In this document: piece by piece, positions 6,307 to 59,792 of the stretch
Layout: the number at the start of each line of letters is the position of its first letter
Position numbering within the stretch: position 1 is the first letter of the stretch
Assembly: GCF_006345805.1 (NCBI RefSeq)
Contig: NC_043005.1
Span: 95,790,001-95,854,000 of the forward strand
DNA length: 64,000 bases
Reading direction: 5' to 3'
Origin: Octopus sinensis
Taxonomy: Eukaryota
Notes under the pieces: model-generated
The model's database searches: none
Told to the model about the DNA's origin: nothing
Seen by the model: the letters and a program-made list of their open reading frames with translations, nothing else
Translations under genes and position numbers: made by a program

Positions 6307-6440
6307 GGCCACGATGGGCTTCCTGGAATCTAGGCATATTTTTATGTATCCGCTGTGCGGGTATTCATCGCAACCTTGGTGTACATATATCCAAGGTGAA
6401 GTCAGTAAACTTAGATACTTGGACTGCAGAACAACTAGCT
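6307..6440 (+). CDS. SMAP1: SMAP-family ArfGAP, internal coding exon (probable exon 2): [45 protein letters not shown]
   Basis: Translation matches the ArfGAP zinc-finger core (WASWNLG-CIRC-GIHR-LGVHIS-VKS-LD-W) of SMAP1/SMAP2. Acceptor AG at 6305-6306, donor GTGAGT at 6441; 134 nt, phase 1 to phase 0. SMAP1 versus SMAP2 cannot be resolved and this is probably a co-orthologue. Confidence 0.95.
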
Positions 6441-22711: not shown

Positions 22712-22797
22712 ATGTTAATGGAAATGGGAAACAGTCGTGCAAGAGCTGTTTATGAAGCTAACATTCCCGATAATTTCCGAAGACCGCAGACAGATTC
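22712..22797 (+). CDS. SMAP1: SMAP-family ArfGAP, internal coding exon (probable exon 3): MLMEMGNSRARAVYEANIPDNFRRPQTD(S)
   Basis: Follows the polypyrimidine tract TTTTTTTCAG (AG 22710-22711). Continues the previous exon in frame and matches SMAP MGN-A--YEA-P--FRRPQ-D; 86 nt ending in phase 2 at GTATCC. Confidence 0.95.
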
Positions 22798-22864
22798 GTA
22801 TCCTTTTTTTTTTTGTGAAAAACACTCAGACTGAAAGCGTATTTCTCAATTTTAATTTCAATTA

Positions 22865-24049
22865 CGAGGGACGTTCAATAAGTAATGCCTCTGACCCACT
22901 TGAAATTTTGCATGTGCAATCATTTATATCTCTATAGAGTAAGTGGCAAATTACAGCTCTGAATTAATTGTGGTTTCTGATTTACAGGTGTTTGAACCGA
23001 GTCAAGTGTGAAATGGAGCCTGTTGAGTGTCGAGCAGTGATCCGGTTTTTGTATTTGAAAGGACGCACACCACTGGAGACTTTTGATGAAATGAAAGTAA
23101 CTTATGGTGATGATGCCCCATCATATGACCTTGTAAAACGCTGGCATCGTGAATTCAAACATGGTCGGAACTCTGTGGAAACAGCTCCCAGATCTGGTCG
23201 CCCCCTTCTGCCATTGATGAGGCATCTGTCTGTCAAGTTGAGGCTGCCATTTTGGAAGATCGACGCATAATTATTTGCCAAATAGCCCATGAGGTCAAGA
23301 TTAGTACTGGGTCTGTGGAAACTATCATTCATGACCATTTGCATATGCAAAAGGTGTCTGCCAGATGGATTCCCAGGTTGCTCACGCCTTTCCAGAAGCA
23401 AGAACGCGTCGAGTGCTTGAGGGTGAATTTGGAGATGTGCCAAGAAGATGAGTCAAAATTTTTCAAAAGACTGATTACACAGGATGAAACCTGGGTCCAT
23501 CACGATGATCCAGAGACCAAAGCCCAGTCAATGCAGTGGAAGCACCGTGACTCACCCCCTCCAAAGAAGGCAAGGGTGCAGCCCTCCGCTGGCAAGGTCA
23601 TGCTCACAGTCTTCTGGGACCAGGACGGAGTAGTGATGACAGATTTCCTGGCAAAGGGTACCATCCTCCTCCTGCAGGACAACGCTCCGGTCCACAACTC
23701 GCTTGTCGCCAGATCAGAAGCACAGGCATATGGTTATGAACTCCTCCCCATCCCCCCTACTTTCCTGACCTTGCACCCTCTGATTTTCACCTCTTCCCAA
23801 TCATGAAGTTGTTTTTGAAAGGAAAGCGTTTCCCAGATGATGCAGCCTTGATTTCTGAAGTCACGTTGAGGTTGGAGGACAAAGCTGGGTTCTTCTACAA
23901 AAACGGTCTCCAGAGCCGCATCAAACGATGGGAGAAATGCGTAACTCTGGGTGGTTCCTATGTAGAAAAAGACTAATAACTGTGCCAAGTTTCGTTGCTC
24001 TACTGCTATGGGAAGTGGGTCAGGGGCATTACTTATTGAACGCCCCTCG
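22865..24049 (+). mobile_element. Mariner (Tc1/mariner, irritans-like) transposon, defective
   Basis: TIRs CGAGGGACGTTCAATAAGTAATGCC / GGCATTACTTATTGAACGCCCCTCG flanked by TA at 22863-22864 and 24050-24051; 1185 bp. Confidence 0.93.
23013..23976 (+). pseudogene. Mariner transposase pseudogene
   Basis: MEPVECRAVIRFL...PRSGRP, WIPRLLT, ITQDETWVHH, LLQDNAP and PDLAPSDF, spread over three frames. There is an internal deletion between AKGT and ILLLQDNA. Confidence 0.9.
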
Positions 24050-24648
24050 TACAAACACTATTTAAAACTAAACCATCACACATATAAAACTGGTACATTC
24101 TCACAAAAGGATAAGATATTGGGCTATTGGCTGTTGCATCATGAATTTGTATACCGCTGTATGGCTATAGTTGAACCACTGTACGGCTATAGTTGAAGAC
24201 ACTTGTCTGAGGTTCCACACAGTGGCACTGAACCCAAAACCATGTGATTGGGGAGCTAACTTCTTAACCACACAGGCATGTGTTTGTGTATGAGTGTGTG
24301 TATAAAAATATACATACTCATACACACACACATACATATATGTGTGTGTGTATGTGTGTATATATATATCATCATCGTTTAATTTCTGTCATCCATGCAT
24401 GTATAGGTAGGATGGTTGACTGGAGCCGACCATGTCTGTTTTGGCAGAGTTTTTACAGCTGGATGCCCTTCCTAACACCAACCACTCTGCAGGATGGACT
24501 GAATGCTTTTTACGTGGTACCAGCACAGACAAGGTCAATTTTGGCATGATTTTTACAGCTGAATGCCCTGCCAAATGCCAACCACTGTACACACACACAC
24601 ACACAAGATTTGTCAGGCCAAGTGAGATTATAGTTGTGGCCTTTTTTG

Positions 24649-24900
24649 GTGTCATGTAAATGGCACCCGTGAAATCAGTGATGGCCATTGCCAGTGCCAT
24701 GTAAATAGCAGCTGTGAAATTGGAGTTGGGCCATCGCAATGGCACCCATGAATCGTAGTCATTGGCAGTGCCATGTAAATGGCACCTGTGAATTGTTGTG
24801 GCCATGGTCAGTGCCATCTAAATGGCACCCATGAATTGTAGCAATGGTCATTGCCAGTGCCATGTAAATAGCACCTGTGAATCGTAGTCAAGGTCATTGC
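24649..24900. repeat. About 6 degenerate 35-46 bp tandem units, each with a GTGCCAT-gtaa-ATGGCAC hairpin
   Basis: TGCCATGTAAAT-like cores start at 24650, 24695, about 24730, 24769, 24812 and 24858. Lies between two oppositely oriented family C copies. Confidence 0.8.
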
Positions 24901-25078
24901 TGCCAGTGGCACATAAAAGCACCCATTACACTCCTGGAGCAGTTGGCGTTAGGAAGGGCGTCCAACTGTAGAAACCTTGCCAAGTCAGACTGGGGCCTGG
25001 TGTAGCTCTCTGGCTTATCAGCTTCAATCAAACTGTGTAACCCATGCCAGCATTGAAAGTGGACATTAAATGATGATA
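24896..25078 (+). mobile_element. RTE 3'-end repeat (family C)
   Basis: GTTGGCGTTAGGAAGGGCGTCCAAC ... AAATGATGAT tail. Confidence 0.7.
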
Positions 25079-25083
25079 TATAT

Positions 25084-25310
25084 ATTTCTTTACTACCCAC
25101 AAGGGATATAGAAGGGACAATCAAAGACAGACAAAGGGATTGAGTCGATTATATCGACCCTAGTGCTAAACTGGTACTTAATTTATCAACCCTGAAAGGA
25201 TGAAAGGCAAAATCGACCTTGGTGGAATTTGAACTCGGAACTTAACGACAGACGAAATACGGCTACGCATTTCGCCCGACATGCTAACGTTTCTGCCAGC
25301 TCGCCACCTT
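25084..25310 (-). mobile_element. SINE family B
   Basis: Reverse complement of the 33957 and 59924 copies (GAGTTCAAATTCC B box; CCTTTCATCCTTTC-GGGTCGATAAATTAAGTACCAG body). Confidence 0.85.
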
Positions 25311-26807
25311 TGATGATGATATATATCATTATCATCATTTAATGCATGTTCTCCATGCTGCCATTAAATAATGATATATACACACACACACACACACAGT
25401 CAGGAATTTTTGCTATTTGTATTTTCCATAGGTAGTGACACTCTTTAATTAACTGGATGTGTTTTCATTACAATATAAAAGTATATTTTGTCAGTATTCA
25501 AGTAAGTTGTTTTGGTTTTGAAGTTTGATAATTTGGGTCATATTTATAAATGCTGGATTATTTGCATACAAAAATATAATAAAAGAAGAGATAGGAGGAG
25601 CTATTCAATAAATGAAAGAAATCAATGGCCTGAAAAAATTCCATGTCATTGATCTCTTTCATTTAATTTTCAGTTACTATTGCTAACTTTGTTTGTATTT
25701 TATAGAGAGAGGGTTATTTCTAAACTCTGTGTTCTTATATGCAACCATTTAACCACATAAGGTACACATTGACAATCAGGCTAAGTTGTGTCTGTATTAT
25801 CATGCAGAATAACTGAAGTTGCTGCTTGTGGTGTAATTGGAGACTAGTGTGCACACACAAGTTTTCCTTTTTTTAAGCAAGGAATCATTAGAGAAGATTA
25901 ACAGGACAGCACAGATTAAAGCTAATGTGACAATTGGTACTTGAATTATTTTAGTGTGTGTTTTATGTTTATTGAGCATGACAGCATGTCTGTAATGGTG
26001 ATATAATATTTGTACTGGTGTGATATTAATATTTGGATGTTTGTAGTTAGTTGTACATGCAAATGTGTGTCTGTTTGGATTGGAACATACAGTGGACAGG
26101 AGAGTGTTAACACATGTCAACTCTAAACAGTTACATGGCGTGAAATGAACAGACATAGCTCACAGATTTGTGTTTCAGTTATATTGTGTCTCTGCCTAGC
26201 AAAGGATTGGGTATTTCACATTTTAGTACTTATTTGGCATCACTGATTTGATGCCGATTTATTTGACATCAGACGTTTTAATATTTCTCTCATTTAATGA
26301 TTCTCTTATTCTGTCTCTCTCTCTCTCTAGCACTCTCTTTCTTTCTCCCTATTTATGTGTGTGAGCATATTTCTCTTTTTTGTGTATATACCTGTGTGTC
26401 TGCTCTTAGCGCCAAAAAGTATTGCCACCAAAACAGGTTCAATGTCCAATCAGCTCTGCCAAATCGCCAGCATCCAAACATCTCAGCCTGCTATGGTTCA
26501 TACTGTACCCTCTGGCATGGACATGCATTGATGTAGTGTGTAAGGGGATGTGTGATAGCCTGAACATTGTCTCTTCTGTTCAATCTATTTCTGTATGCCT
26601 ACAGATACGGGTGGGGACTTATGGAGGAATGCAAGGTGACCTCACTCAGAGTGCACTATTTGCTGTTCTGTATAGAGGGTTTCTGAATCTGATATGCACG
26701 TTTTGAATGGTTGGAAGAATTTTAGGTTTGTAGGAGAAAAAAGACTGAGTTGAAGCTAGGCTATCATTATCCTTCATCAATTTTATTATATTGTTTATTT
26801 ATGTGAT

Positions 26808-27042
26808 CATCATCATCATCGTTTATTGTCCGCTTTCCATTCTAGCATGGGTTGGACGATTTGACTGAGGTCTGGTGAACCAGATGGCTGCACCAGGCTC
26901 CAATCTTTATCTGGCAGAGTTTCTACAGCTGGATGCCCTTCCTAACGCCAACCACGTCAGGCGGTACTGGCAATGACCTTGCTGGAATCTTTTTACACAT
27001 GCCACCGGCACAGGTGCCAGTAAGGCGACGTTGGTAACGATC
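26808..27042 (-). mobile_element. RTE 3'-end repeat (family C)
   Basis: (CAT)n tail and GCTGGATGCCCTTCCTAACGCCAACC. Confidence 0.75.
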
Positions 27043-27491
27043 GGTTTTATTATTTCCACTAAATCTGGTGCAGTGAATGCTTTCAGTGTGTTCCCTCATC
27101 TGATATTTTTCTGATTCTTCCAAGTATAAAGCAAGGTCACCAGAATGCATTTCAAGCTTCATCTAATATGTAGATCTCACATGTGGAACCTTGGCGCAGG
27201 TAGTGATGGTATGGGGATTTGTGTGTGTTTAGATGGAAGATTTCTGTTCCCACTGGCAAGAAAGGAGCTTTCTGTTCTTTTTGAAGATTGTTTACATGTG
27301 AAATTGGAATGTGTAATTAATTTTACGTACATGTAAATAATTGTTTAATGAAAGGGAAAGCAGTCAATAATCAGTATGAATTTAAATTAAATTTAATGAT
27401 TTTCTTCCTATTCGATTTTTGTTTTGTCCTCAGCCTACAAACATTTATAATGAGTTACTTTAAATGATTAACTTTCATCTGATCGTTATTA

Positions 27492-27501
27492 TACTTTGAC
27501 T
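27492..27501 (+). promoter_or_regulatory. Putative U12 branch-point sequence (branch A at 27499)
   Basis: TACTTTGACT resembles the consensus TTCCTTRAC; 11 nt from A27499 to G27510. Confidence 0.6.
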
Positions 27502-27510
27502 AAGTTGTGG

Positions 27511-27601
27511 TGCATTGGAAGCTTTTATCAGGGCTAAATATGAACACAAGCGTTATATAGCTCGTGAGTGGGTTCAACCAAAGCCAACAGTACCAAAGCA
27601 G
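27511..27601 (+). CDS. SMAP1: SMAP-family ArfGAP, internal coding exon (probable exon 4): (S)ALEAFIRAKYEHKRYIAREWVQPKPTVPKQ; alternative start 27505 adds Cys-Gly
   Basis: FIRAKYE-K-Y is the end of the ArfGAP domain. In frame with the phase-2 end of the previous exon; donor CAG|GTAATT at 27602. The start is ambiguous between an AG acceptor (exon from 27505) and a GG acceptor (exon from 27511). Confidence 0.9.
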
Positions 27602-39990: not shown

Positions 39991-40212
39991 CAGGTGAAAA
40001 AAGAGGTAAGGGAGGTAAGACTGTTTACTTACTGCTGCTGCTGCTGGTTTATATAAGTTGATGTTATCCTTGTTTTCTTTCATACTATGTTACTATATAT
40101 CCTGGTTAACTGAGTATTAGTTAAAAAAAACAAAAAATAATAATAAAATGAAAGTTTCCGAATTAAATAAATCAATTTCTAAATTCTGTAGATAAACAAA
40201 ACTTATAATGTC

Positions 40213-52628: not shown

Positions 52629-53228
52629 TATATATATATATGCCAATTAAGGACTGAACACGAAAAGTGGACAGTCAACATGCTAGATATAGACGTCAAA
52701 TCGCCATTCACCACAAAAGATTATGTTCTCAGATCAAACTCAACACAAAACCATAGCAATAAACAAGTGAAAAAATATACGAAATAAAATAATTACTTTA
52801 ATTATTTTATTTCGTATATTTTTCACTTGTTTATTGCTATGGTTTGTGTGAGTTTGATCTGAGAACATAATCTTTTGTGGTGAATGGCGATTTGACGTCT
52901 ATATCTAGCATGTGACTGTCCACTTTTCGTGTTCAGTCCTTAATTGGTATATATAAATTTTAATCTTCGGATTCTTTTTTAATATGCTAGACCACTGGTC
53001 TTAATTGATAAATATCAATTTCTACCCTTAATTAATTTGATATATATATGTATATATGTATTATATATAATATATATATTATATATTATATGTATATTTA
53101 TGTATATATATATGTATATTATGTATATATATATGTAGGTTATATATGTATATTTTGTATATATATATGTATGTTTATATAGTATATTTATGTATATATA
53201 TATATGTATATTTATGTATATATATATT

Positions 53229-53271
<43 letters not shown>

Positions 53272-53900
53272 GTATATTTATATATATATTATTCATCTCA
53301 TCATCATATATATGGTATATATATATAGTATATTTATGTATATATATATATGTATTTTATGTATTATATATATATGTATATTTATATATATAATTGTATA
53401 TTATATAATATATATATATATATGTGTGTGTTTATATTTATATATATATATGTATGTATGTATATTTATATATACACATATATATATATATATATCTGTA
53501 TATTTATATATATATATATATATGTATATTTATATATATATATATATGTATATTTATATATATATATATGTATATTTATATATATATATATGTATATTTA
53601 TTATATATATATATAGAATTTATATATATGTATATTTATATATATATATATATATGTTAATATATGTTATATATATTATATATATTGTATATTTTATATA
53701 TATATATAATATATGTATATATATATGTATATATATATATTATTTGATTATATTGTATATATATATATTATACTATATAATATATATATATATGTATATT
53801 ATATATATATATAATTATATATATATATATAATGTATATTTATATATATATAATATGTATATTATATATATGTATATGTATTATATATATATATATATAT
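50688..53900. repeat. Degenerate (TA)n/(TATG) expanse of about 3 kb, interrupted by a palindromic island
   Basis: Almost pure AT from 50688-52640 and 53040-53900; source of the spurious Y/I-rich ORFs. A shorter tract lies at about 48865-49130. Confidence 0.95.
52643..52947. repeat. Near-perfect palindrome, about 150-bp arms
   Basis: 52643-52794 is the reverse complement of 52801-52947 apart from a few single-base indels. Confidence 0.93.
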
Positions 53901-54109
53901 ATGAGGAGAGGACCTCGGAAGATTCACAAGATCCGAGTTTTTCCCTTGTAACTTTTTGGAAAATGGGTTTTTTTTTTTTTTTTTCAATGAAATTTTATAT
54001 AATTGCCTTTCAAATGGCATACATTACGATTATAAAGTAATTTATATTAACCAAATTTTTAATGAAAAACTCCGACTGAAAATTCCACCCAACCCTCTCC
54101 ACGCCATCA

Positions 54110-57782: not shown

Positions 57783-57882
57783 NNNNNNNNNNNNNNNNNN
57801 NNNNNNNNNNNNNNNNNNNNNNNNNNNNNNNNNNNNNNNNNNNNNNNNNNNNNNNNNNNNNNNNNNNNNNNNNNNNNNNNNN
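57783..57882. other. Assembly gap (100 N)
   Basis: Run of exactly 100 N; the true distance across it is unknown. Confidence 1.
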
Positions 57883-57922: not shown

Positions 57923-59792
57923 GATTGATTGATTGATTCTAGTTTCAGCTTATGAGCTGTGGCCATGCTGGGGCACCGCCATTTGGTGTTGCTACTTGGT
58001 TTCACTTCGTGGAGGCTTTCTAGCAACTGCTATTTGGTGCATGAGAGAGTTCGATGCAGCTGCCCTCATCTGCCCCTCCTGCCGTGAAGTTGGTTCATCT
58101 GGGACACCTGACAGGAAGAGATCCAGCTCCATTTTAAAGACATCTGTATCCACCCCATGCAGGTCTCTCAGGTTCTTCGGGAGGATATTGAAGAGCTGTG
58201 GGCTCGGAAGCCCAGGCTATCACAGAATCTTGTCCTACATCTTGATGGCAAGTTTGGAGTCCTAGGCACCACGCAGTGGCACCCAGTTCTGGCATTTGCG
58301 TAACTCTCGATGCCAAAGTTCAGGACACTTCCCTCCAGGATCTTCCAGATGTATTTATGGCATATCTTCCCGCCTACGCTCCAGGGAATATAATTTTAAT
58401 CTCTTGAGTCTTTCCCAGTAGCTTACATTCTGCATAGAGGCTATCTTCTTCGTGTAGCTTCGTTGGATCGCCTCAAGTTCTGTGATCAACTTGACACTGG
58501 ATGGTGACCATAGCTGAGAGCAATAGTCAAAGTGGCTTAGGACAAGTGTCTTCCAGAGGACCATCATGGTTTCTTGTTTTCTTGTTCTAAAGGTTCTAAG
58601 AATCCATCCAGCCAGCCGTCTGCATTTCATTGTCAGTTTAGCAACATGTACATGAAAGGTCGCGTCATCACACATGTGAATACCCAGGTCACGCACTGAT
58701 TGTGCCTCTGGGATTGCAATCCCTCCGGGTCCAGTGTATTCCTTGGGTATTGCATTCAGTTTTGCATGCTGATAGTATAAAGCTTGAAACTTTTCAGCAT
58801 GAACTGCATGCTATTCTTTTCAGCCCCTTGTATATTTCGTCCAGCTCATATTGCAGGTGCTTAGTGTCTTCAGGGTTCTGTATTGCCTGTGAAACTTTTG
58901 TATCATCTGCATAACTTGTGATCGTGGCTCTCCGCGTGGCTGAGGGCATGTCTGAGAGGGCCATTATGAACAGTAGTGGTCCCAAAACAGTGCCCTGTGG
59001 AACACCGCTCACTATTTGCTTGCTAATGGAAGTGGCCCCATTGGCTACTACCACCTGACTTCTATTCTTCAGAAAGTCGTGAAGCCATTCTCCTAGTTTT
59101 CCAACTATGCCAAGATCACGCAGTTTGTGACATATCATTCCATGATCGACTTTATCGAAGGCCTTTGCGAAGTCGAGATATATGACTTCCACATTTGAGT
59201 GGTTGAGCAGTTGTTTCAGCACCCAGTCATAGTGCTGTAGGAGCTGAGTTAAGCAGCTTCTTCCTGGTCGGAAACCATGTTGGGTGTCAGGCAGCAAGTT
59301 ATTTTCTTCAAGGAAGGTGATTAGTTTCCTGACTATTCGTTCCATGACCTTGCTGATGTGTGAGGTCAGAGAGATAGGTCTGTAGTTCTTGGCTCCGCTC
59401 TGCTACCTCCTTTATGAATAGGGCATATTTTACCTTCCTTCAGTTTTCTTGAAGTTTGCCAGCTGCAAGGAAGCTCTGAAAGAGGAACTGCAGTGGTCTT
59501 GCTAAGACTCTCTTACATACTTTTAGGAGGATTGCCGGAATCCATCGGGGCCAATAGCTGAGTCTGTTTTCATTTCATCTATAGCCTTTATTACATCGTC
59601 TTCCTTTATATCGATGTAATTTATCGTGCGCCCCTCTGATTCTATATCTGCAGTGGTAAAGAGTCAGTTGGATTGCTGATTTGGAAATGCCCAAGGGGTG
59701 GAGTGAAAACACTCTTGAATTGTTCATTCAGTATTTCACTTACCCTCATTGGTTTTCCTGTGAGTGTGCCATCCTTTTCAAGGAGTGGCCCT
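57923..59792 (-). mobile_element. 5'-truncated CR1/L2-type LINE with 3' UTR and (AATC)n tail
   Basis: RT motifs QHGFRPGRSC, YLDFAKAFDKVDH, SGVPQGTVLGPLLF, YADDTK; downstream RDLGI...DYCSQLWSP...YWERLKRLKLYSLERRRE; frameshifted. Confidence 0.92.

What the first reader, a model, noticed from the sequence alone, without database searches (positions are those of the whole stretch)
22798..27510. Minor-spliceosome intron in SMAP with a probable non-canonical GT-GG boundary
Seen: donor GTATCCTTTT, branch-like TACTTTGACT (A27499), then AAG TTGTGG TGCATTGGAA. Established: U12 introns usually place the 3' splice site about 10-20 nt after the branch A and tolerate non-AG termini. The only nearby AG (27503-27504) is 5 nt from the branch A and would insert Cys-Gly into the ArfGAP domain (TDSCGALE). 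Splicing after GG 27509-27510 is 11 nt from the branch A and gives TDSALE, matching the D-x-A-x-E spacing I recall for human SMAP1 (TDQAVE). Inference: a GT-GG U12 intron, possibly with a competing in-frame AG acceptor giving a 2-residue isoform switch. AG-only gene predictors would mis-model this exon.
Basis: partly seen in the sequence, partly recalled or inferred. Interest (0 to 1): 0.82.

Follow-up and report, generated by a model that had tools for sequence, protein, structure and literature searches.

The report
Octopus SMAP1 minor-spliceosome intron ending GG
An ancient minor-spliceosome (U12-type) intron in the octopus SMAP1 gene has probably kept its splice position although its usual AG end has mutated to GG; this is a rare but already known intron subtype that makes AG-only gene predictors add two false amino acids.

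Summary
The window holds exons 2-4 of an octopod SMAP1 (small ArfGAP) gene on the + strand. The intron from 22798 to 27510 starts with a perfect U12-type donor, GTATCCTTT, which occurs only once in the 64 kb. It has a U12-type branch site, ACTTTGAC (branch A at 27499), no polypyrimidine tract, and ends in GG 11 nt after the branch A.

The same phase-2 intron is U12-type in Argonauta, a scallop, an oyster, a fish SMAP1 and a mammalian SMAP2. Argonauta has TAG|TGC where Octopus has TGG|TGC, and squid or cuttlefish mRNA contigs show the same TAG. So Octopus has an A-to-G change at position -2.

The GG junction gives TDSALE, which matches 289 of 297 SMAP homologues and every RefSeq isoform of O. 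sinensis, O. bimaculoides and A. hians. The upstream AG gives TDSCGALE, found only in one O. vulgaris pipeline model.

GT-GG U12 introns are a known subtype, about 0.2% of conserved animal minor introns. No octopod RNA could be reached, so use of GG is inferred, and a minor AG isoform is not excluded.

This is a new member of a known kind, of modest interest.

The parts
6307..6440 (+). SMAP1 exon 2 (ArfGAP domain, ..[10 protein letters not shown]...TAEQLA). It has a U2-type acceptor with a pyrimidine tract and the donor GCT|GTGAGT.
   Evidence: tblastn of homologues; sequence; splice-site table
22712..22797 (+). SMAP1 exon 3 (MLMEMGNSRARAVYEANIPDNFRRPQTD-S). It ends in phase 2 with ..GAT TC.
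   Evidence: 100% identical to the octopod RefSeq proteins
22798..27510 (+). U12-type (minor-spliceosome) intron of 4713 nt, with termini GT...GG
   Evidence: orthologous U12-type introns
22798..22806 (+). U12-type 5' splice site GTATCCTTT (9 of 9 to consensus). It is a poor U1 site (TTC|GTATCC).
   Evidence: unique in the window; identical in Argonauta; conserved as GTATCCTT or GTATCTTT in scallop, oyster, fish and mammal
27493..27500 (+). Branch-point sequence ACTTTGAC, with the predicted branch A at 27499. It is orthologous to Argonauta's CCCTTGAC.
   Evidence: The two departures from TCCTTAAC (C to T, A to G) would keep G-U wobble pairs with U12 snRNA; this rests on general knowledge, not a test here.
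27503..27504 (+). Proximal in-frame AG, 5 nt after the branch A. Using it would add TTGTGG (Cys-Gly).
   Evidence: used in the O. vulgaris model CAI9729502.1
27509..27510 (+). Inferred intron terminus GG, 11 nt after the branch A. It is homologous to the AG of Argonauta and of a decapodiform.
   Evidence: alignment A1; squid mRNA isoforms; protein spacing
27511..27601 (+). SMAP1 exon 4 (T + ALEAFIRAKYEHKRYIAREWVQPKPTVPKQ), followed by the U2-type donor CAG|GTAATT

Best explanation
The interval 22798-27510 is a U12-type (minor-spliceosome) intron of an octopod SMAP1 gene. It is orthologous to a minor intron present in SMAP1/SMAP2 genes across bilaterians.

**Inferred mechanism** (from the established U12 pathway):
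- U11 and later U6atac recognise the donor GTATCCTTT.
- U12 pairs with ACTTTGAC and bulges A27499 as the branch point.
- The second step picks the 3' site mainly by distance from the branch, with an optimum of 11-13 nt. It therefore uses the junction after G27510 even though the dinucleotide there is GG.

The terminal G is kept; only the penultimate A of the ancestral TAG has mutated to G in the Octopus lineage. The product is the conserved ...RRPQTDS-ALEAFIRAKY... ArfGAP sequence.

**Shown here:** the sequence signals, the orthology, the ancestral AG at the same position, and the protein-level fit.

**Inferred:** that octopus mRNA is actually joined 22797|27511, and that splicing depends on the minor spliceosome.
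For: 1. **Donor.** It matches the U12 consensus 9 of 9, is unique in 64 kb, and lies exactly at the end of the coding homology.
2. **Branch site and tract.** The branch site has its A 11 nt from GG. The pyrimidine content of the last 20 nt is 12/20, against 15-18/20 for the three U2-type acceptors of the same gene. Turunen et al. give an optimum branch-to-3' site distance of 11-13 nt and note the lack of a pyrimidine tract (PMC3584512).
3. **Orthologous introns are all U12-type**:
   - Argonauta hians: GTATCCTTTT...CCCTTGAC, 13 nt, TAG|TGC
   - Pecten maximus: GTATCCTTC...TCCTTAAT, 10 nt, AG
   - Saccostrea echinata: GTATCTTTT...CATTAAC, 12 nt, AG
   - Danionella SMAP1: GTATCCTTG...CCCTCAAC, 11 nt, AG
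   - Nannospalax SMAP2: GTATCTTTT...TCCTTAAT, 14 nt, AG
   At least 10 database proteins also read through this donor as D-[S/Q]-Y-P, which is G|TAT CCN.
4. **Ancestral AG at the same position.** The Octopus-Argonauta alignment puts TGG|TGC opposite TAG|TGC. Logan mRNA contigs of a decapodiform show GATTC|TGCTTTGG (10 contigs on record, 6 read) and GATTC|TAG|TGCTTTGG (6 contigs). That genome therefore also has TAG|TGC and uses it.
5. **Protein spacing.** TDSxLE without an insert is found in 71/71, 110/118 and 108/108 SMAP homologues that span the site. The GG junction aligns without gaps to human SMAP1 2CRR and SMAP2 2IQJ.
6. **RefSeq models.** All isoforms of O. sinensis (X1-X4) and O. bimaculoides (X1-X3), and A. 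hians X3, read TDSALE and are 100% identical to the GG-spliced translation.
7. **Independent sign of GG.** The O. vulgaris model encodes Cys-Gly, that is TGT GGT. That assembly therefore carries the same GG.
8. **Precedent.** GT-GG is a documented U12 subtype. There are 5 human and 3 mouse cases, including an AG/GG switch between human and mouse SLC12A7 (PMC1557818). It makes up 0.216% (159) of conserved animal minor introns (PMC10639083 Table S1).
Against: - No octopod transcript spanning the junction could be retrieved, so GG use rests on inference.
- The species of the window was not identified. If it is not O. sinensis or O. bimaculoides, their RefSeq models say nothing directly about this GG. 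RefSeq junctions can also rest on protein alignments rather than RNA.
- The protein alone cannot tell GT...GG (22798-27510) from a 1-nt-shifted TA...GT intron, because TCT and TCG both encode Ser. The shifted version is rejected only on consensus grounds.
- The general Pfam ArfGap profile does not prefer the GG junction: 118.2 bits against 119.6 with Cys-Gly.
- A weaker branch candidate, TCGTTAT (A27488), lies 16 nt from the AG. Distance alone therefore does not forbid AG use.
- In Saccostrea, RefSeq annotates isoforms that use an AG only 6 nt after the predicted branch A.
Confidence: 0.85

Rival explanations
1. The AG at 27503-27504 is the acceptor really used, constitutively. Octopus SMAP1 then carries an extra Cys-Gly (TDSCGALE), as in the O. 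vulgaris annotation.
For: - It is the only canonical in-frame AG nearby.
- O. vulgaris CAI9729502.1 has exactly this sequence.
- A weak branch candidate (A27488) lies 16 nt upstream.
- Insertions of 1-2 residues at this site exist in scallops (+R, real in the genome) and in Saccostrea isoforms (+KS).
- The Pfam ArfGap score is not lowered by the insert.
Against: - The AG is only 5 nt from the orthologous, best branch site, and the U12 optimum is 11-13 nt (PMC3584512).
- All seven or more RefSeq isoforms of the two annotated Octopus species lack the insert. O. sinensis is otherwise 460/460 identical to the O. vulgaris protein and diverged only about 2.5 My ago (PMC10700109).
- The O. vulgaris model comes from an EVM/PASA/Augustus pipeline. 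From general knowledge, such pipelines accept only canonical sites.
- The ancestral splice position, seen in Argonauta and the decapodiform, is the GG position.
Confidence: 0.06
2. Both sites are used. GG is the main acceptor and the proximal AG a minor or regulated alternative, giving a 2-residue (Cys-Gly) isoform.
For: - U12 3' site choice is known to be error-prone, and alternative 3' sites are the commonest alternative event at minor introns (PMC3584512).
- The same intron has a 3-nt alternative acceptor in a decapodiform. Both forms are assembled from RNA, in 10 and 6 contigs, and differ by nothing else.
- It has a 6-nt alternative acceptor in two Saccostrea species in RefSeq, with a geometry (AG at 6 and 12 nt) almost the same as in Octopus (5 and 11 nt).
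Against: - No RefSeq isoform of O. sinensis or O. bimaculoides carries Cys-Gly.
- The only carrier is a canonical-site pipeline model.
- No RNA data were available here.
Confidence: 0.15
3. G27509 is an assembly or sequencing error. The true genome has TAG|TGC and an ordinary GT-AG U12 intron.
For: Argonauta and the decapodiform have A at this position. Raw reads were not available.
Against: The O. vulgaris protein model encodes Gly (GGT) from the same bases, so that assembly has GG too. This is an independent check only if the window is a different assembly, and the window's species was not determined.
Confidence: 0.03
4. The intron is removed by the major (U2-type) spliceosome using a non-AG 3' site.
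For: Non-AG (TG) alternative acceptors exist in U2-type introns (PMC2374985, listed).
Against: - The donor TTC|GTATCC lacks the -1 G and +5 G that U1 prefers, and it matches the U12 consensus perfectly.
- There is no pyrimidine tract.
- Orthologues carry strong U12 branch sites 10-14 nt from the 3' end.
Confidence: 0.02

Closest known systems
GT-GG subtype of U12-type introns (for example human and mouse ARAF, and human SLC12A7; Sheth et al. 2006, PMC1557818)
   Same: A U12 consensus donor starting GT, a U12 branch site close to the 3' end, a terminal GG instead of AG, and a one-nucleotide difference from the canonical AG. The AG/GG switch between related species, seen in SLC12A7 between human and mouse, is mirrored here between Argonauta or the decapodiform (AG) and Octopus (GG).
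   Different: A different gene and phylum. Use of the GG site is inferred here from homology and annotation, not shown by cDNA. A competing in-frame AG lies 6 nt upstream.
The orthologous canonical GT-AG U12-type intron of SMAP1/SMAP2 in other animals (Argonauta, Pecten, Saccostrea, Danionella SMAP1, Nannospalax SMAP2)
   Same: The same position and phase (after the second base of the codon following ..RRPQ-x-D), the same donor motif, and a branch site 10-14 nt from the 3' end.
   Different: Those introns end in AG. The Octopus intron is also much longer (4713 nt against 236-585 nt in the other molluscs) and carries a mariner-type transposase relic.
Tandem or alternative 3' splice sites at U12-type introns (3' site 'wobble', reviewed in PMC3584512)
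   Same: Two in-frame candidate acceptors lie a few nucleotides apart downstream of a single branch site. Relatives show real 3-nt and 6-nt variants at this very intron.
   Different: For Octopus itself no second isoform has been observed.

Membership tests
U12-type (minor-spliceosome) intron | 5' splice site matching /RTATCCTTT | tested here: met
   GTATCCTTT at 22798-22806 matches 9 of 9. It is the only copy in the window.
U12-type (minor-spliceosome) intron | Branch-point sequence resembling TCCTTRAY near the 3' end | tested here: met
   ACTTTGAC matches 6 of 8 with the TTRAY core intact, and is orthologous to Argonauta's CCCTTGAC. On its own this is weak evidence: 2.7% of positions have such a motif at the right distance.
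U12-type (minor-spliceosome) intron | Short branch-to-3' splice site distance (optimum 11-13 nt) | tested here: met
   The distance is 11 nt to G27510. It is not met for the AG, which is 5 nt away (PMC3584512).
U12-type (minor-spliceosome) intron | No distinct polypyrimidine tract | tested here: met
   12/20 pyrimidines, against 15-18/20 at the three U2-type acceptors of the same gene.
U12-type (minor-spliceosome) intron | Orthologous intron is U12-type in other lineages | tested here: met
   Five genomes were read directly. Tyr-Pro read-through peptides are seen in at least 10 more proteins.
U12-type (minor-spliceosome) intron | Splicing depends on U11, U12, U4atac and U6atac snRNPs | not testable with these tools
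   This needs an experiment. Larue & Roy 2023 list Octopus sinensis among species with minor introns (PMC10639083). No snRNA gene lies in the window (Rfam).
GT-GG subtype of U12-type introns | Genomic intron terminus is GG | tested here: met
   G27509 and G27510 are in the window. The O. vulgaris model translates the same bases as TGT GGT. Raw reads were not available.
GT-GG subtype of U12-type introns | The mRNA junction joins the exon directly after the GG | tested here: inconclusive
   No octopod RNA contig was found. Indirect support comes from RefSeq TDSALE models, SMAP-wide spacing, and the ancestral AG at the same position.
SMAP (small ArfGAP) gene family | ArfGAP domain with SMAP-type sequence | tested here: met
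   Pfam ArfGap scores 118 bits. The match is 100% over 104 aa to Octopus SMAP1 RefSeq proteins. The E-value is 2e-46 to human SMAP1 in PDB 2CRR.

The most novel reading that the evidence does not exclude
The proximal AG (27503-04) and the GG (27509-10) may both be used in Octopus, in a regulated way. The 2-residue switch would then be one instance of a recurrent micro-variation at the start of the last ArfGAP helix. It would be generated at the same ancient U12 intron in several mollusc lineages: 3 nt in a decapodiform, 6 nt in oysters, and a fixed +Arg in scallops. That would suggest selection for tunable 3' site choice at a minor intron.
Probability: 0.1. Interest if true: 0.45.

Novelty: new member of a known kind. 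Interest (0 to 1): 0.3.

Why it matters
- **Annotation.** Pipelines that accept only canonical splice sites put two false residues (Cys-Gly) into the ArfGAP domain of octopus SMAP1, as the deposited O. vulgaris protein shows. At the same intron in other animals, many models read through the donor.
- **Biology.** This is a clean natural example of the minor spliceosome choosing its 3' site by distance from the branch point rather than by the AG dinucleotide. An A-to-G change at position -2 left the splice position unchanged, although a canonical in-frame AG lies 6 nt upstream.
- **Limits.** It opens no new question. GT-GG minor introns and AG/GG switches between species have been catalogued since 2006.

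Tried and rejected
- **Fetching the Octopus and Sepia loci.** The gene ranges are 126 kb and 107 kb, too long for DNA to be returned. Isoform X3 is not on record.
- **Identifying the window's species.** Exact look-up of window ORFs found nothing on record. The O. sinensis, O. bimaculoides and O. vulgaris proteins are identical over the window's exons.
- **Finding octopod RNA contigs across the junction.** None appeared in three protein searches. One search used a query padded with X to pass an apparent length filter. The spliced junction and the genomic acceptor had no exact matches in JGI metagenome contigs.
- **Using the Pfam ArfGap score to choose the junction.** The score does not discriminate: 118.2 bits for GG, 119.6 for AG and 119.1 for TG. 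Only SMAP-specific conservation discriminates.
- **Finding SMAP1 or SMAP2 named as a minor-intron gene in the literature.** There were no hits in full text or in the supplements held.
- **A-to-I RNA editing as a rescue.** Rejected by reasoning, since editing cannot turn a genomic G into A.
- **A 1-nt-shifted TA...GT intron.** It would give the same protein. It was rejected because it destroys the perfect U12 donor register that all the orthologues share.
- **Rfam scan of the window.** Nothing found.
- **Weak minus-strand similarity to exon 3 at 24978-25061.** Judged to be chance.
Full report
**1. Observation**

- Exon 3 of the gene ends ...CCG CAG ACA GAT TC at 22797 and is followed by GTATCCTTTTTTTTTTT from G22798.
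- The 3' region reads ...TTATTATACTTTGAC(A27499)TAAG(27503-04)TTGTGG(27509-10)|TGCATTGGAAGCTTTTATC...

Joining 22797 to 27511 gives ...RRPQTDSALEAFIRAKYEHKRY.... Joining 22797 to 27505 gives ...TDSCGALE....

The only other AGs nearby are at 27520-21, which is out of frame, and at 27530-31.

GTATCCTTT occurs once in the 64 kb on both strands, against 0.83 expected. That single copy lies exactly at the end of the coding homology.

**2. The gene**

tblastn and protein searches show that the + strand carries exons of an octopod SMAP1 (stromal membrane-associated protein / small ArfGAP) gene:
- exon 2 at 6307-6440
- exon 3 at 22712-22797
- exon 4 at 27511-27601
- an alternatively included microexon at 39994-40005 or 39994-40014

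Exon 1 and the C-terminal exons lie outside the window. The O. bimaculoides gene spans 126 kb.

The translation spliced at GG is 100% identical over 104 residues to RefSeq SMAP1 of Octopus sinensis, O. bimaculoides and Argonauta hians. It aligns without gaps to human SMAP1 (PDB 2CRR, E 2e-46) and SMAP2 (2IQJ).

The first protein search returned only proteins of 182 residues or fewer. I therefore padded the query with X to reach full-length proteins. This is a work-around and should be kept in mind.

**3. The intron is U12-type**

- The donor matches the U12 consensus 9 of 9. It is a poor U1 site (TTC|GTATCC), whereas the other donors of the gene are GTGAGT, GTAATT, GTAAGG and GTAAGA.
- The last 20 nt before the terminus hold 12 pyrimidines. 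The three U2-type acceptors of the same gene hold 15-18.
- ACTTTGAC matches TCCTTRAY at 6 of 8 positions with the TTRAY core intact, and its A is 11 nt from G27510. Such a motif 9-15 nt upstream occurs at 2.7% of window positions. It is supporting evidence, not decisive.

The decisive evidence is orthology. I fetched the same phase-2 intron from five other genomes.

| Species / gene | Donor | Branch site | nt to 3' end | 3' end and exon start |
|---|---|---|---|---|
| Argonauta hians | GTATCCTTTT | CCCTTGAC | 13 | TAG\|TGCCTTGG (intron 585 nt) |
| Pecten maximus | GTATCCTTC | TCCTTAAT | 10 | TAG\|ACGATCA |
| Saccostrea echinata | GTATCTTTT | CATTAAC | 6 and 12 | CAG\|TAAAAG\|CTCTCTG |
| Danionella cerebrum SMAP1 | GTATCCTTG | CCCTCAAC | 11 | CAG\|A |
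| Nannospalax galili SMAP2 | GTATCTTTT | TCCTTAAT | 14 | CAG\|A |

In addition, at least ten database proteins from fishes, a sea cucumber, gastropods and unnamed assemblies read through this donor as ..D-[S/Q]-Y-P.., which is G|TAT CCN.

This is therefore an ancient bilaterian minor intron, present in both vertebrate paralogues. I could not find SMAP1 or SMAP2 named as minor-intron genes in the searchable literature. Those gene lists usually sit in supplements that are not held.

**4. The 3' end**

The Octopus-Argonauta alignment places Octopus ...ACTTTGAC--TAAGTTGTGG|TGCATTGG opposite Argonauta ...CCCTTGACTTTGGTTATTAG|TGCCTTGG. The Octopus GG is thus the homologue of the Argonauta AG, changed at position -2.

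Logan mRNA contigs of an unidentified decapodiform add RNA-level evidence. Its protein is 85% identical to that of Acanthosepion pharaonis. The contigs show two isoforms that differ by nothing but 3 nt:
- GATTC|TGCTTTGG (10 contigs on record, six read)
- GATTC|TAG|TGCTTTGG (six contigs)

That genome must therefore also contain TAG|TGC, and it splices after that AG.

The GG junction restores the spacing found in 71/71, 110/118 and 108/108 SMAP homologues that span the site. The eight exceptions are all molluscs:
- four scallops with +Arg, which is real in the Pecten genome
- a 'LOW QUALITY' Haliotis rubra model
- two Saccostrea isoforms with +Lys-Ser
- one O. vulgaris model with +Cys-Gly

All RefSeq isoforms of O. 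sinensis (X1-X4) and O. bimaculoides (X1-X3) read TDSALE.

The O. vulgaris protein CAI9729502.1 reads TDSCGALE. It comes from an EVM/PASA/Augustus/GeneMark pipeline (PMC10700109). From general knowledge, such pipelines accept only canonical sites.

Its Cys-Gly (TGT GGT) also shows that the O. vulgaris assembly has the same GG. O. vulgaris and O. sinensis diverged about 2.5 My ago (PMC10700109). Their SMAP1 proteins are otherwise identical at 460 of 460 aligned residues. O. sinensis very probably has GG too, and its RefSeq models then require the GG acceptor.

**5. Mechanism**

What follows is inferred from the established U12 pathway. The donor is bound by U11 and U6atac. U12 pairs with CTTTGAC; the two departures from consensus would still allow G-U wobbles, which rests on my own knowledge of the U12 snRNA sequence. 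A27499 is the branch point.

The 3' site is then taken at the favoured distance. Turunen et al. give an optimum of 11-13 nt and note that non-canonical termini work and that 3' site choice is error-prone (PMC3584512). The terminal G is retained. The AG at 27503-04 is only 5 nt from this branch point.

**6. What remains open**

- **No octopod RNA was seen.** No octopod RNA contig across the junction was found.
- **The species is unknown.** The species of the window could not be determined.
- **RefSeq evidence may be indirect.** RefSeq junctions may rest on protein alignment rather than RNA.
- **Pfam does not discriminate.** The general Pfam ArfGap profile does not distinguish the junctions: 118.2 bits against 119.6.
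- **A second branch candidate exists.** A weaker candidate (A27488) lies 16 nt from the AG.
- **Oysters use a close AG.** In Saccostrea, RefSeq annotates use of an AG only 6 nt after the predicted branch A, alongside the conserved one at 12 nt.

A minor Cys-Gly isoform in Octopus therefore cannot be excluded. I put it at about 0.15, and constitutive AG use at about 0.06.

**7. Comparison with what is known, and verdict**

GT-GG minor introns are an established subtype.
- Sheth et al. list five human and three mouse cases. ARAF is conserved as GT-GG, and SLC12A7 is GT-GG in human but GT-AG in mouse (PMC1557818).
- Larue & Roy count 159 cases, or 0.216% of conserved animal minor introns. Their comparisons include O. 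sinensis (PMC10639083).

The Octopus SMAP1 intron is a new, well-supported member of this kind, with a clear AG-to-GG switch relative to Argonauta and decapodiforms.

Its interest is modest (0.3). The value lies mainly in correcting annotation, and in giving a tidy natural example of distance-based 3' site choice.

Noticed in passing
window 23252-23806 (+): An ORF with a mariner/Tc1-type transposase domain (Pfam PF01359, E 2e-15) lies inside the U12 intron. The orthologous Argonauta intron is only 585 nt, so most of the 4.7 kb in Octopus looks like transposon insertion.
   Followed up: partly
window 39994-40014 (+): An alternatively included SMAP1 microexon with two tandem donors 9 nt apart: cag|GTGAAAAAAGAG|gtaagg gives VKKE, and ...GTAAGGGAG|gtaaga gives VKKEVRE. 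These match O. sinensis isoforms X2 and X4. The exon is skipped in the O. vulgaris model and in A. hians X3.
   Followed up: partly
L001-L012 (Logan mRNA contigs of an unidentified decapodiform): Two SMAP1 mRNA forms differ only by TAG at the exon 3/4 junction (TDSALE against TDSSALE). Each was assembled in several runs of two projects. This is a 3-nt alternative 3' site at the same U12 intron. The upstream site's dinucleotide is unknown because no genome was available.
   Followed up: partly
L014 about 2480-2570 (Saccostrea echinata): The same U12 intron ends ...CATTAACTTCAG|TAAAAG|CTCTCTG. There are two AG acceptors 6 nt apart, 6 and 12 nt after the predicted branch A. Both are annotated in RefSeq isoforms of two Saccostrea species (with or without Lys-Ser). 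The Logan mRNA contigs found show only the short form.
   Followed up: partly
database proteins P0039, P0091, P0093, P0095, P0097-P0099, P0102, P0110, P0380: Many deposited or assembled SMAP protein models from fishes, a sea cucumber and gastropods run through this donor (..D[S/Q]-Y-P..) and then terminate. This is a systematic mis-annotation at this minor intron.
   Followed up: partly
window 58794-59345 (-), 57783-57882, 53204-54040: A reverse-transcriptase relic (Pfam PF00078, E 8e-22), a 100-N assembly gap, and a long TA-rich microsatellite-like stretch that reads as a spurious 278-aa ORF. All lie inside the next SMAP1 intron.
   Followed up: no
window 24738-24900: A tandem repeat with a 43-46 nt unit and about 3.5 copies lies inside the U12 intron.
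   Followed up: no
window 24978-25061 (-): A weak translated similarity to SMAP exon 3 (..LIEADKPESYTRPQSDLA..) lies on the opposite strand inside the intron. The best E-value is 0.01 among 120 queries, so it is probably chance.
   Followed up: no
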